This document shows, piece by piece, positions 6,084 through 7,673 of a stretch of 64,000 bases of DNA. Position numbers and translations under genes: made by a program. The notes under the pieces are model-generated. The model did no database searches, was not told where the DNA came from, and saw nothing but the letters and a program-made list of their open reading frames with translations. The stretch comes from Glycera tridactyla (taxonomy: Eukaryota), in the NCBI GenBank assembly GCA_965644265.1, contig OZ286462.1, positions 25,854,001-25,918,000 of the forward strand, in the 5' to 3' direction. Within the stretch, counting starts at the first letter, position 1, and each line of letters starts with the position of its first letter.

Positions 6084-6279
6084 AATTCTGAAGAGCTACA
6101 CTACGTTGTTCTGGTCACTGTTCGGTTTGACTTCACTGAACACAGTGCGCGAGGGCGACGTCCAACCATTCACCAAGCATGTTGGAGAATATTTGCTCAT
6201 GACCTACCACGTCCTAGCCATCATTGTTCTAATTAACATGCTAATCGCTATGATGTCCAATAGTTTTCAAAATATTGAG
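6084..6279 (+). CDS. TRPC: TRPC channel exon, pore helix + filter + S6, copy A (alternative exon)
   Basis: Pyrimidine tract and tgcag acceptor (AG ends 6083); donor GAG|gtatga at 6280; phase 2 to 0, 196 nt. Encodes ILKSYTTLFWSLFGLTSLNTVREGDVQPFTKHVGEYLLMTYHVLAIIVLINMLIAMMSNSFQNIE, with the TRPC LFW pore-helix motif and the NMLIAMM S6 motif. Confidence 0.95.
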
Positions 6280-7483
6280 GTATGACACTCGAGATTATAG
6301 TCTCTCAAGCGCTACTCATCCTCCTTGTCTTCTTGTGTCTCTATTGTTCCCATTGTTCATTATTGTTTTTTTTACAAGGTCGAAACTGATGTCACTGACA
6401 TAGAATTTTGACTTGCTGAATCTGAGTCTAAAGCGTATAGGATTTCAAAAAAGATGTTCTATCCTTACTAAAAAAAGTTCCAGCCCTCATTCAAGAAGAG
6501 CATGAATGACATTGATAGCATGCATCTGATAGTATAGGTCTTGAACGGAAGCACAAGCAAAATTGTCCTATACACACAAGCATGTGTCATTCTGCACACA
6601 GGTATACACACAGAATTGTACATTTCTTATGGACAACCAATTGAAGATGTGTATATGACGTCATATAACCTCAACTCAGCTTGCTGACGTCATCAATGGA
6701 TGTCAGTGATGTCAGTTACGGCCTGAATGTCTGGTAATAACAGTAATTCCACAAGTCTTGATTGGTTGTCTGATGACGCCATCTACCGTCATTCATCCAT
6801 ACTTGTAGCAGCCATGTGTATTGTCTATTCTAGCCACTTGGAGCGCTGTAAGCTGGCGCCGCTATCTACACAGTCTTCAAGCCATGGCGTGTTGTATCAC
6901 GCAAGGTGCTTTTCACCACACGTTCATAGGCTCACTCAAACATGTCTCTTCTCAATTCTTTTGGCCTGCTTTTCTTGTAACATAGTCCAACTTCAAATAA
7001 CTTCACAAATTGGTACGGGCGCAACATCTTTATGTCCACATTATATATGCCAAAAGTAACCGCAGGTGTCGGATTCTTTTATTTGTGGATGATTATCTGC
7101 CACGTGACTCTTGTAGACGTGACCAGGAGGAATAATTTGGGTAGAAGCCAGCCTATGGATTGATGTAGTCGAATATTTCGTCGATATCATCACAGGAAAA
7201 AAAGCAATGCCCTTTCGAAGTAGCTTGCGCCGTGCGTGCAGTGTTTAGTAGGTCGCCCTTGAAGCAAGGGACGGAATGACACGTTTGGTGCAACTTGCCC
7301 ATGACATGCCATCAGCTTGGAGGCTCGTGTACACGCCATTGTTGGTACCACAACACCGGTCGACAGCACGCATGATGTCCTAGCACATCTTACATCGTAC
7401 CTCAGCCACCGGGCCACCATATGCATAATGATCTGTGTCAACGTGAGTGACGCACACATGGTGCATCTGTCTCTGTGTTTCAG

Positions 7484-7673
7484 ACTGGATACGTCCTTTA
7501 AGACTCTGTTCTGGTCCATGTTTGGCCTTATCACCTTAGACACACTCGAGGTCAATGTGTACTACGTCGAAGTGTTTGGCAAGCTACTCTTTGGCGTTTA
7601 TAATGTGGCCACAAAGATCTTGCTCCTGAACATGCTCATTGCAATGATGTCTAAATCATTTCACACCATTGTG
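7484..7673 (+). CDS. TRPC: TRPC channel exon, pore helix + filter + S6, copy B (alternative exon)
   Basis: Acceptor ctctgtgtttcag (AG ends 7483); donor GTG|gtaagc at 7674; phase 2 to 0, 190 nt. Encodes LDTSFKTLFWSMFGLITLDTLEVNVYYVEVFGKLLFGVYNVATKILLLNMLIAMMSKSFHTIV, homologous to copy A (28/65 identities by manual alignment). Confidence 0.92.

What the first reader, a model, noticed from the sequence alone, without database searches (positions are those of the whole stretch)
6084..7673. Tandem duplicated, mutually exclusive pore exons in a TRPC channel: one gene, two interchangeable pores
Seen in sequence: two homologous exons 1.2 kb apart each encode pore helix, selectivity filter and all of S6. 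Both are phase 2 to 0 with good splice sites, and there is only one downstream TRP-box exon. Joining A to B reads ACT GGA TAC GTC CTT TAA (stop at 7499-7501), and skipping both shifts frame, so only one can be used per productive mRNA. They are ~43% identical in protein. In the conserved motifs the differences are synonymous (aac atg cta atc gct atg atg tcc vs aac atg ctc att gca atg atg tct; ttc ggt ttg vs ttt ggc ctt), which indicates an old duplication with both copies under purifying selection. Established knowledge: this segment sets ion selectivity and forms the lower gate in TRPC channels, which are tetramers, and mutually exclusive exons tune Nav/Cav and other channels. Inference: one locus makes two channels with the same sensing and cytoplasmic domains but different pores, and possibly mixed A/B tetramers. 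I do not recall whole-pore mutually exclusive splicing being described for TRPC, but I could not search the literature.
Basis: partly seen in the sequence, partly recalled or inferred. Interest (0 to 1): 0.92.

Follow-up and report, generated by a model that had tools for sequence, protein, structure and literature searches.

The report
Two interchangeable pore exons, TRPC gene
An invertebrate (probably annelid) TRPC cation-channel gene carries two tandem, anciently duplicated exons that each encode the whole pore, both kept intact by selection in more than twenty related genomes, so one gene very probably makes two channels with different pores.

Summary
Exon A (6084-6279, 196 nt) and exon B (7484-7673, 190 nt) are homologous (49% over 61 residues). 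Each matches the pore helix, selectivity filter and S6 of solved TRPC3/4/5/6 structures at E about 1e-11. Both are AG/GT-flanked and 3n+1 long. A joined to B gives TAA at 7499-7501. Skipping both gives TAA at 13204-13206.

New evidence: the A-B pair is intact, in the same order, length class and splice phase, in every contig of other species long enough to show it (over 20). Introns have diverged beyond alignment or to 51-78% identity, while exons stay at 86-96%. dN/dS is 0.01-0.19 for A and 0-0.24 for B. B is therefore translated in frame, which requires A to be skipped.

B carries three conserved basic residues (K33, K/R44, K57) where A has E, I/V, N.

Exon B, never exon A, has a complementary intronic element (window 7013-7054 pairs with 7590-7631). 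Analogous elements occur in three other lineages, suggesting RNA-structure control of pore choice.

No transcript evidence could be obtained. No paper found describes pore-swapping splicing in TRPC. An earlier scan note on this window flagged B's atypical S6.

Verdict: real; a new variant of a known kind.

The parts
6084..6279 (+). Pore exon A (196 nt; 1 nt + 65 codons): pore helix (TLFWS), filter (FGLTS), pore loop, S6 to the lower gate (I54/S58/Q62). It is the orthologue-like ('ancestral') pore type.
   Evidence: Conserved at 71-85% aa in other species. Clade support 0.97, sister to the single pore exon of L008.
7484..7673 (+). Pore exon B (190 nt; 1 nt + 63 codons): same segment, divergent pore loop. 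Basic residues K33 and K57 invariant, K/R44 always basic. Lower gate I52/S56/H60.
   Evidence: Conserved at 67-94% aa. Invariant columns. dN/dS 0-0.24.
6280..7483 (+). Intron between A and B (1204 nt). Too long for steric exclusion. Not alignable to the orthologous introns of L007 or L001.
7013..7054 (+). Intronic 'anti-B' element: an inverted partial copy of exon B codons 36-49, complementary to 7590-7631.
   Evidence: blastn 34/42, E 2.7e-7. Local score 27 against a maximum of 19 in 300 dinucleotide shuffles. Duplex -42 kcal/mol. The helix is present in the MFE and centroid folds of 7000-7690.
7590..7631 (+). Arm inside exon B (codons FGVYNVATKILLLN) that pairs with 7013-7054. The roughly 535-nt loop holds exon B's branch region, 3' splice site and first 105 nt.
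7499..7501 (+). TAA reached if A and B are both included (premature stop, 6 codons into B).
   Evidence: Equivalent stops occur in five other species.
12999..13208 (+). Single shared TRP-box exon (70 codons, [31 protein letters not shown]...). It reads in frame after either A or B. TAA at 13204-13206 is reached if both pore exons are skipped.
23677..23792 (+). Downstream TRPC exon (DVMRRLVSRFIHQWKKQMRQDGVNEDDLLEIKQDISSL), 100% identical in protein to L007.
25008..25392 (+). Last coding exon of the TRPC gene (TGA at 25390-25392).

Best explanation
Exons A and B are a tandem-duplication-derived pair of mutually exclusive exons in a TRPC-family channel gene. Each mature, translatable mRNA carries exactly one of them between the upstream transmembrane exons (outside the window) and the single TRP-box exon. 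The locus therefore yields two subunit isoforms that are identical except for the pore helix, selectivity filter, outer pore loop and S6 down to the lower gate.

Exclusivity is backed up by reading frame. Both exons are 3n+1, so A+B or neither gives a premature stop upstream of further junctions, and such mRNAs should be removed by nonsense-mediated decay.

A is the orthologue-like pore. B is an old, divergent copy with three extra conserved positive charges per subunit: at the top of S6, in mid-S6 and just below the gate. It also has a different outer loop and a variable lower-gate residue (H/Q/N where other TRPCs have Q). It should therefore conduct or gate differently.

Choice of B is probably controlled by RNA structure. 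An intronic inverted copy of part of exon B base-pairs with the exon and loops out its 3' splice site, so that A would be the default and B would need the helix to be opened or out-competed.

Shown: anatomy, homology to TRPC pores, frame logic, conservation and purifying selection on both exons, the B-specific charge signature, and the complementary element.

Inferred: actual splicing pattern, NMD, the effect of the helix, and functional differences.
For: Anatomy and homology.

Frame logic: in six species.

Conservation:
- The A-B pair is intact in all loci long enough to show it: L001-L004, L006, L007, L009-L016, L018-L025 and L089.
- The order S5 exon, A, B, TRP-box exon is seen in L007. The order A, B, TRP-box exon is seen in L009-L011, L013 and L089.
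- Against L007 and L001, only the exons are alignable to the window.

Selection:
- 47 pairs give dN/dS 0.01-0.19 for A and 0-0.24 for B. Introns are 51-78% identical and exons 86-96%.
- Window against L001, exon B: pN 0.06, pS 0.64.

Age: A and B clades each hold all the species, with support 0.97 and 0.95.

B signature: K33 and K57 are invariant and position 44 is always K or R in 13 B sequences. A has invariant E35, I/V/C at 46 and N59 (S in L008).

Mapping: the positions align to TRPC5 G581 and I621/N625/Q629. Their roles as filter and lower gate are stated in PMC6656536.

RNA element:
- Window.
- Group-2 clade: conserved at 0.85-0.92 against about 0.45 for the rest of the intron, and a -35 to -46 kcal/mol duplex in 16 of 16 loci.
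- L001 and L090.
- No such element for exon A in any locus.
- Synonymous divergence is lower in B than in A in all 47 pairs, as expected for a regulated alternative exon.
Against: No transcript, EST-like fragment or annotated isoform containing B joined to the TRP-box exon (or A joined to it) was recovered. All fragments found read through into introns and so are genomic.

The upstream exon and its phase are not visible in the window.

The anti-B element is absent from L007, L009-L011 and L089. It sits at different places and pairs with different parts of exon B in different lineages, so it is not a universal requirement.

Variants in the group-2 helix keep pairing in only about half of the cells. 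This is no more than transitions alone would give, so covariation does not prove the helix.

Functional consequences of the B pore are untested.
Confidence: 0.8

Rival explanations
1. Exon B is a regulatory 'poison' exon. It is included together with A to introduce the stop at 7499-7501 and down-regulate the channel by NMD. It is never translated as a pore.
For: A+B inclusion gives an early stop in all six species tested. Exon B has strong splice sites, conserved flanking intron elements and low synonymous divergence, as highly conserved poison exons do.
Against: A poison exon has no need to keep a protein sequence. B keeps the TRPC pore frame open in more than 20 loci, keeps LFW and LNMLIAMM, and shows dN/dS 0-0.24 in the frame that is read only when A is skipped. 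Third-codon positions carry most of the change.
Confidence: 0.06
2. Exon B is a decaying or unused relic of a tandem exon duplication (a pseudo-exon), and the gene makes only the A channel.
For: The A-type exon groups with the single pore exon of the related gene in L008 and with spider trp-1, so A is the ancestral form. No annotated full-length protein with a B-type pore appeared among 1.84 billion representatives.
Against: B is at least as conserved as A: 94% against 80% aa to L007, and 87% against 85% to L001. It has no stop or indel in any locus and is under strong purifying selection, while the surrounding introns are saturated. The absence of full-length B proteins is expected because isoforms collapse into one cluster at 50% or 90% identity.
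Confidence: 0.03
3. B is used, but in a different transcript class. Either it comes with an unseen alternative upstream exon or promoter rather than as a simple A/B switch, or its pairing with A is tied to other alternative exons outside the window.
For: The 5' part of the gene is outside the window. In L007 the donor of the S5 exon that would feed A or B could not be placed unambiguously. First-stage notes report many exon arrays in this genome.
Against: A and B have the same entry phase and exit phase and are directly adjacent in all species. In L089 the A end, B and the TRP-box exon lie within 1.6 kb with no room for extra units. No third pore copy exists in the window.
Confidence: 0.08
4. 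The complementary intronic elements are neutral by-products of inverted partial duplications of exon B, with no role in splicing.
For: They differ in position and in the exon segment copied between lineages. They are missing in five loci. Variants do not preserve pairing more than transitions would.
Against: In the group-2 clade the element is the best conserved part of the intron, at 0.85-0.92 against about 0.45, across 14 distinct arm haplotypes from 16 loci. Four lineages have one for exon B and none has one for exon A. In the window, 34/42 complementarity persists in an intron otherwise unalignable to its relatives.
Confidence: 0.3

Closest known systems
Alternative selectivity-filter exons of invertebrate NALCN (PMC3557258, listed; abstract only read)
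   Same: Alternative splicing in invertebrates gives one channel gene alternative pore-lining segments, and so two alternative pores.
   Different: NALCN is a single four-domain polypeptide. By recollection (only the abstract was read here), one domain's pore loop is swapped, with a known lysine-for-glutamate change in the filter. Here the swapped unit is the whole pore helix, filter and S6 of a subunit that tetramerises. All four pore walls therefore change, or A/B mixtures become possible. The filter glycine is kept in both, and the charge changes lie in S6.
Mutually exclusive S6 or S3-S4 exons of voltage-gated channels (for example CaV1.2 exons 8/8a, cited in the reference list of PMC4165533; Nav exon 5N/5A from general knowledge)
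   Same: Tandem-duplicated homologous exons of equal phase that tune gating or pharmacology. They are old and under purifying selection.
   Different: Those exons replace one helix or linker in one of four domains and differ by a few residues. A and B here are only 49% identical and include the filter region.
Competing RNA-structure control of mutually exclusive exons (Dscam docking/selector type; PMC6071210, listed)
   Same: Long-range intronic base-pairing is tied to a particular variant exon. Such elements can arise by duplication.
   Different: Here there is no shared docking site with one selector per exon. Only exon B has a partner, and the partner pairs with the exon body itself. It looks more like an exon-masking or looping-out hairpin.
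Other tandem pore-exon pairs in invertebrate TRP genes found here (P0128, P0129, P0131/P0137, P0133/P0147, P0184/P0195)
   Same: The homologous exon (pore helix to S6) is duplicated in tandem with a short intron in trp-like, other TRPC-like and NompC-like genes.
   Different: In most of those the two copies are each other's closest relatives, indicating recent or independent duplications. The A/B pair here is deeply diverged, and B forms its own clade. Their splicing is equally untested.

Membership tests
TRPC (canonical TRP) channel | [quoted passage not shown] | tested here: met
   TLFWS is in both exons. W10 is invariant and F9 nearly invariant (V in P0126) in B orthologues, and LFW is kept in all A orthologues. 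The motif is described in PMC6656536.
TRPC (canonical TRP) channel | TRP box EWKFAR directly after S6 | tested here: met
   The exon at 12999-13208 begins [15 protein letters not shown]. It reads in frame after A and after B.
TRPC (canonical TRP) channel | Significant sequence match of the pore and S6 to solved TRPC structures, best among TRP subfamilies | tested here: met
   TRPC3/4/5/6 and Drosophila TRPgamma match at E 1e-9 to 6e-12. NompC matches only at 2e-3.
TRPC (canonical TRP) channel | Filter glycine and I-N-Q lower gate (TRPC5 G581, I621/N625/Q629) | tested here: inconclusive
   G14 is kept in both window exons (A or S in a few orthologues). The gate is I/S/Q in A, and I/S/H in the window's B (Q, N or K in other species). 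Ser at the N position is also what I recall for fly TRP, which I did not verify here.
TRPC (canonical TRP) channel | N-terminal ankyrin repeats, TRP_2 domain, S1-S5 | not testable with these tools
   They lie upstream of the window. The orthologous contig L007 does hold the S1-S5 exons upstream of A.
Mutually exclusive exon pair from tandem exon duplication | Adjacent homologous exons on one strand within one gene | tested here: met
Mutually exclusive exon pair from tandem exon duplication | Same splice phase and length class, canonical splice sites, conserved across species | tested here: met
   Lengths are 196 (199 in L025) and 190 nt, with AG/GT in all loci.
Mutually exclusive exon pair from tandem exon duplication | Inclusion of both or of neither breaks the reading frame | tested here: met
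   (six species).
Mutually exclusive exon pair from tandem exon duplication | Both copies under purifying selection at the protein level | tested here: met
Mutually exclusive exon pair from tandem exon duplication | Transcripts contain exactly one of the two | not testable with these tools
   Three fragment searches and one exhaustive search returned only genomic read-through ORFs.
Docking-site/selector RNA control (Dscam, 14-3-3zeta type) | One docking site complementary to a selector next to each variant exon | tested here: not met
   Only exon B has a complementary partner, and that partner pairs with exon sequence. Exon A has none in seven loci.

The most novel reading that the evidence does not exclude
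A single TRPC gene encodes two physiologically distinct pores. One is a canonical pore. The other has a ring of twelve additional conserved lysines or arginines along S6, with altered conductance, divalent permeability or rectification. The choice between them is set cell by cell by an RNA hairpin that masks exon B. A/B heterotetramers would give graded pore properties. The same device (tandem pore-exon duplication) has arisen repeatedly in invertebrate TRPC and TRPN genes.
Probability: 0.3. Interest if true: 0.8.

Novelty: new variant of a known kind. Interest (0 to 1): 0.64.

Why it matters
Vertebrates diversify TRPC pores through seven paralogous genes and heteromerisation. Here, an animal lineage appears to reach the same end by swapping the entire conduction module within one gene. 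This gives a natural, evolution-tested chimera. Sensor and cytoplasmic domains are identical, and only the pore helix, filter and S6 differ. Three conserved charge changes point to the residues that matter.

It offers a clean system for asking what in the TRPC pore sets conductance, calcium permeability and gating. It also offers a system for asking how an exon-masking RNA helix can control such a choice. Finally, it flags that gene annotations keeping only one isoform under-report channel diversity in annelids and other invertebrates.

Tried and rejected
1. Transcript evidence was sought four ways:
- exon B in a longer stop-free carrier;
- the TRP-box exon, to catch either junction;
- a 280-aa A+B carrier, to reach longer ORFs;
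- an exhaustive phmmer search.
All B-type and TRP-box hits were genomic ORFs that read into introns. None showed a splice junction.

2. The upstream (S5) exon was sought in window 1-6083 by tblastn with five full-length TRPCs and by tblastx with L007. It was not found. The N run near 5.1-5.2 kb was left alone.

3. The S5 donor in L007 could not be placed unambiguously, so the entry phase remains inferred.

4. A third pore exon or a reverse-strand copy was looked for. There is none, apart from the 14-codon inverted fragment at 7013-7054.

5. The group-2 conserved intron element was searched for in the window. It is absent, and the window has its own, different anti-B element.

6. An RNAduplex energy scan of exons against long flanks was tried. 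It was rejected as a statistic because shuffled controls reach -35 to -52 kcal/mol. It was replaced by local complementarity scores against dinucleotide shuffles. An earlier version timed out.

7. Covariation in the group-2 helix was examined. The exon arm is nearly invariant, and the intron-arm variants are half pairing-preserving, so the result is not decisive.

8. Steric exclusion was rejected because the intron is 265-1204 nt. U2/U12 incompatibility was rejected because all sites are GT-AG.

9. Organism identity could not be settled. A search for the contig accessions in papers found nothing. The annelid assignment rests on my recollection that the JGI Ga0056xxx, Ga0126xxx and Ga0209xxx sets are gutless-oligochaete metagenomes, and on an unchecked first-stage note.

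10. Literature: nine searches found no description of pore-swapping mutually exclusive exons in TRPC. The mutually exclusive TRP exons reported in insects are N-terminal.

Full report
**What is there**

The window is eukaryotic DNA of about 40% G+C. On the + strand it carries the 3' half of a TRPC-family channel gene.

Reading 5900-7900 shows two exons:
- Exon A is 6084-6279, with acceptor ...ctcggtgtgcag and donor gtatga.
- Exon B is 7484-7673, with acceptor ...ctctgtgtttcag and donor gtaagc.

They are 196 and 190 nt long. Each is one nucleotide plus 65 or 63 codons.

The peptides are 49% identical over 61 residues. Each matches the same stretch of solved TRPC structures at E 1e-10 to 6e-12: TRPC4/5 residues 567/571-627/631 and TRPC6 residues 672-735. 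Each also matches Pfam Ion_trans.

By the TRPC5 structure paper (PMC6656536), that stretch comprises:
- the pore helix (569-580, with the LFW motif);
- the selectivity filter (580-584, with Gly581);
- the outer loop;
- S6 down to the I621/N625/Q629 lower gate.

The next coding exon is 12999-13208 and starts [15 protein letters not shown], the TRP box. Further exons lie at 23677-23792 and 25008-25392, ending in TGA. No third pore exon exists in the window. The S1-S5 exons are not in the window.

**Frame logic**

Either exon reads in frame into the TRP-box exon...FQNIE|DHADQEWKF and ...FHTIV|[10 protein letters not shown] followed by B runs into TAA at 7499-7501. Skipping both puts the TRP-box exon in the +1 frame and ends at TAA 13204-13206. 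The same holds in five other species.

**Comparative evidence, the main addition**

A search of 5.8 billion proteins with exon B found 13 fragments that are 66-94% identical. After them, similarity drops sharply to the ~50% level of generic TRPCs.

All 13 are ORFs called on genomic contigs. Their similarity starts right after a ...cag and ends at VV-S (GTG|gtaag), that is, exactly at the exon borders.

I fetched contigs through these fragments and through a scan of metagenome contigs. Every contig long enough has an A-type exon 265-650 nt upstream of the B-type exon. This holds for L001-L004, L006, L007, L009-L016, L018-L025 and L089.

In all of them both exons are open and AG/GT-flanked. Lengths are 196 nt (199 in one) and 190 nt.

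L007 shows the order S1-S4 exon, S5 exon, A, B, TRP-box exon. L089 holds the end of A, B and the TRP-box exon within 1.6 kb. B is therefore an internal exon of this gene and not a nested paralogue.

A more distant relative, L008, has a TRP box reading NHADMEWKF, like a gastropod protein. It has a single, A-like pore exon.

**Selection**

Between the window and L007 or L001, only the exons are alignable. Exon A is 75% identical in nucleotides and exon B 81-83%. The introns are not alignable at all.

In a well-sampled clade of close relatives ('group 2': L002-L006 and L012-L025), 47 unsaturated pairs give these figures:

| Quantity | Exon A | Exon B | A-B intron |
|---|---|---|---|
| dN/dS | 0.01-0.19 | 0-0.24 | n/a |
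| Nucleotide identity | 86-96% | 91-96% | 51-78% |
| Synonymous divergence (pS) | 0.15-0.50 | 0.09-0.32 | n/a |

For the window against L001, exon B has pN 0.06 and pS 0.64.

A tree of the pore peptides puts all A-type exons in one clade (support 0.97) and all B-type exons in another (0.95). Each clade holds all the species. A is sister to the single exon of L008 and lies near spider trp-1.

The duplication thus predates the divergence of all these species, and both copies have been kept as coding sequence. B's protein frame is read only when A is skipped. Purifying selection on that frame is therefore indirect but strong evidence for A-skipping, B-including mRNAs. It excludes the 'relic' reading and makes the 'poison exon only' reading unlikely.

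Synonymous divergence is lower in B than in A in all 47 pairs. This is a pattern typical of regulated alternative exons.

**What differs between the pores**

Both keep LFW, the filter glycine (lost only in a few orthologues) and LNMLIAMM. At the position of TRPC6 E687 and TRPC5 N584, A has Ser and B has Thr.

In 13 B-type sequences K33 and K57 are invariant and position 44 is always K or R. At the corresponding positions:

| B residue | A residue | TRPC5 equivalent | Location |
|---|---|---|---|
| K33 | E35, invariant | 602 | top of S6 |
| K/R44 | I, V or C | 613 | mid-S6 |
| K57 | N (S in L008) | 626 | next to gate residue N625 |

The lower-gate Gln (TRPC5 Q629) is kept in A. In B it is His in the window, and Gln, Asn or Lys elsewhere.

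The outer loops also differ. A reads ...LxxVREGxxQxFTK. B reads ...LxxLE[VI]xxxYVExFGK.

B therefore adds three conserved positive charges per subunit and reverses one acidic residue, a net shift of four charges. That this changes conduction or gating is an inference.

**A possible switch**

In group 2 the A-B intron contains a ~35-nt island (consensus AAGTCCGAACAGATTCTTTCCAACAGCCTTCGA) about 105-140 nt upstream of exon B. It is conserved at 0.85-0.92, against about 0.45 for the rest of the intron.

It is the reverse complement of exon B codons YVEGFGKLLFGLY. The duplex energy is -35 to -46 kcal/mol in 16 of 16 loci.

The window has its own version. Bases 7013-7054 are complementary to 7590-7631 (34/42, E 2.7e-7). 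The local score is 27, against a maximum of 19 in 300 dinucleotide shuffles. The helix appears in both the MFE and the centroid fold of 7000-7690 (z = -2.6). It encloses exon B's branch region, 3' splice site and first 105 nt.

Significant anti-B elements also occur in:
- L090, about 470 nt upstream of B, with score 32 against 17;
- L001, 1.2 kb downstream of B, with score 22 against 19.

No locus has one for exon A.

The elements are absent in L007, L009-L011 and L089. They pair with different parts of exon B in different lineages. Variants in group 2 do not preserve pairing beyond what transitions alone would give.

I therefore rate 'exon-masking hairpin that sets the A:B ratio' as likely for group 2 and plausible for the window, but unproven. 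It does not fit the docking-site/selector scheme of Dscam-type clusters.

**What it is like, and novelty**

Mutually exclusive exons from tandem duplication are well known in ion channels. Invertebrate NALCN swaps a pore-loop exon to change its selectivity filter (PMC3557258).

Nine searches of the open literature found no report of mutually exclusive pore exons in a TRPC channel. The mutually exclusive TRP exons described in insects are N-terminal.

The exhaustive protein search also turned up tandem pairs of the same exon in other invertebrate TRP genes: trp-like, other TRPC-like, spider trp-1-like and NompC-like. Pore-exon duplication may therefore be a recurrent, undescribed theme.

I class the finding as a new variant of a known kind.

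**Limits**

- There is no transcript evidence.
- The 5' part of the gene is not seen.
- The organism is not identified. It is probably an annelid, but this rests on recollection of what the JGI metagenome sets are and on an unchecked first-stage note.
- The functional statements are inferences.

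Noticed in passing
P0128, P0129, P0131, P0137, P0133, P0147, P0184, P0195 (proteins): Genomic read-through ORFs from other organisms each contain two tandem copies of the same pore-helix-to-S6 exon. 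They come from other TRP genes: insect-trp-like, other TRPC-like, spider trp-1-like and NompC-like. In most, the two copies are each other's nearest relatives. Tandem pore-exon duplication looks recurrent in invertebrate TRP channels.
   Followed up: partly
P0135 (526 aa): Seven tandem repeats of a partial S6 segment (VLLNMLIAMMSRSFEIIQ plus about 45 residues of read-through). This is a satellite-like array derived from the 3' end of a TRP pore exon and its intron, in some other genome.
   Followed up: no
L008:9221-10216: A related gene, with a mollusc-like TRP box NHADMEWKF, has a single A-like pore exon only 570 nt upstream of its TRP-box exon. The B copy is therefore lineage-restricted or was lost there.
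   Followed up: partly
window 38956-41868 (+): An intact 970-aa ORF of a non-LTR retrotransposon, with an endonuclease/exonuclease/phosphatase domain plus a reverse transcriptase (Pfam E 3e-6 and 7e-38).
   Followed up: partly
window 51053-51677, 52132-53265, 53882-54062: Three tandem arrays: 53 bp x 12, 71 bp x 16 (94% matches) and (GACA)n x 45. The 71-bp array produces long spurious ORFs on the minus strand. Similar (CTGT/GACA)n tracts lie at about 3.7-4.0 kb.
   Followed up: partly
window about 59750-59920 (-): An exon of a eukaryotic-type alpha-carbonic anhydrase (Pfam Carb_anhydrase E 1e-16; motif [23 protein letters not shown]). A neighbouring gene lies on the opposite strand.
   Followed up: no
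group-2 loci, last ~130 nt of the A-B intron (alignment A3, columns 150-270): Further conserved intronic blocks lie upstream of exon B: CCGAAACAGTTACTAAAA (a likely branch region), TTGTTGTTGTTAG and AAATTAAATTRTGAACGGTGTG. They suggest protein-binding splicing regulators in addition to the anti-B helix.
   Followed up: no
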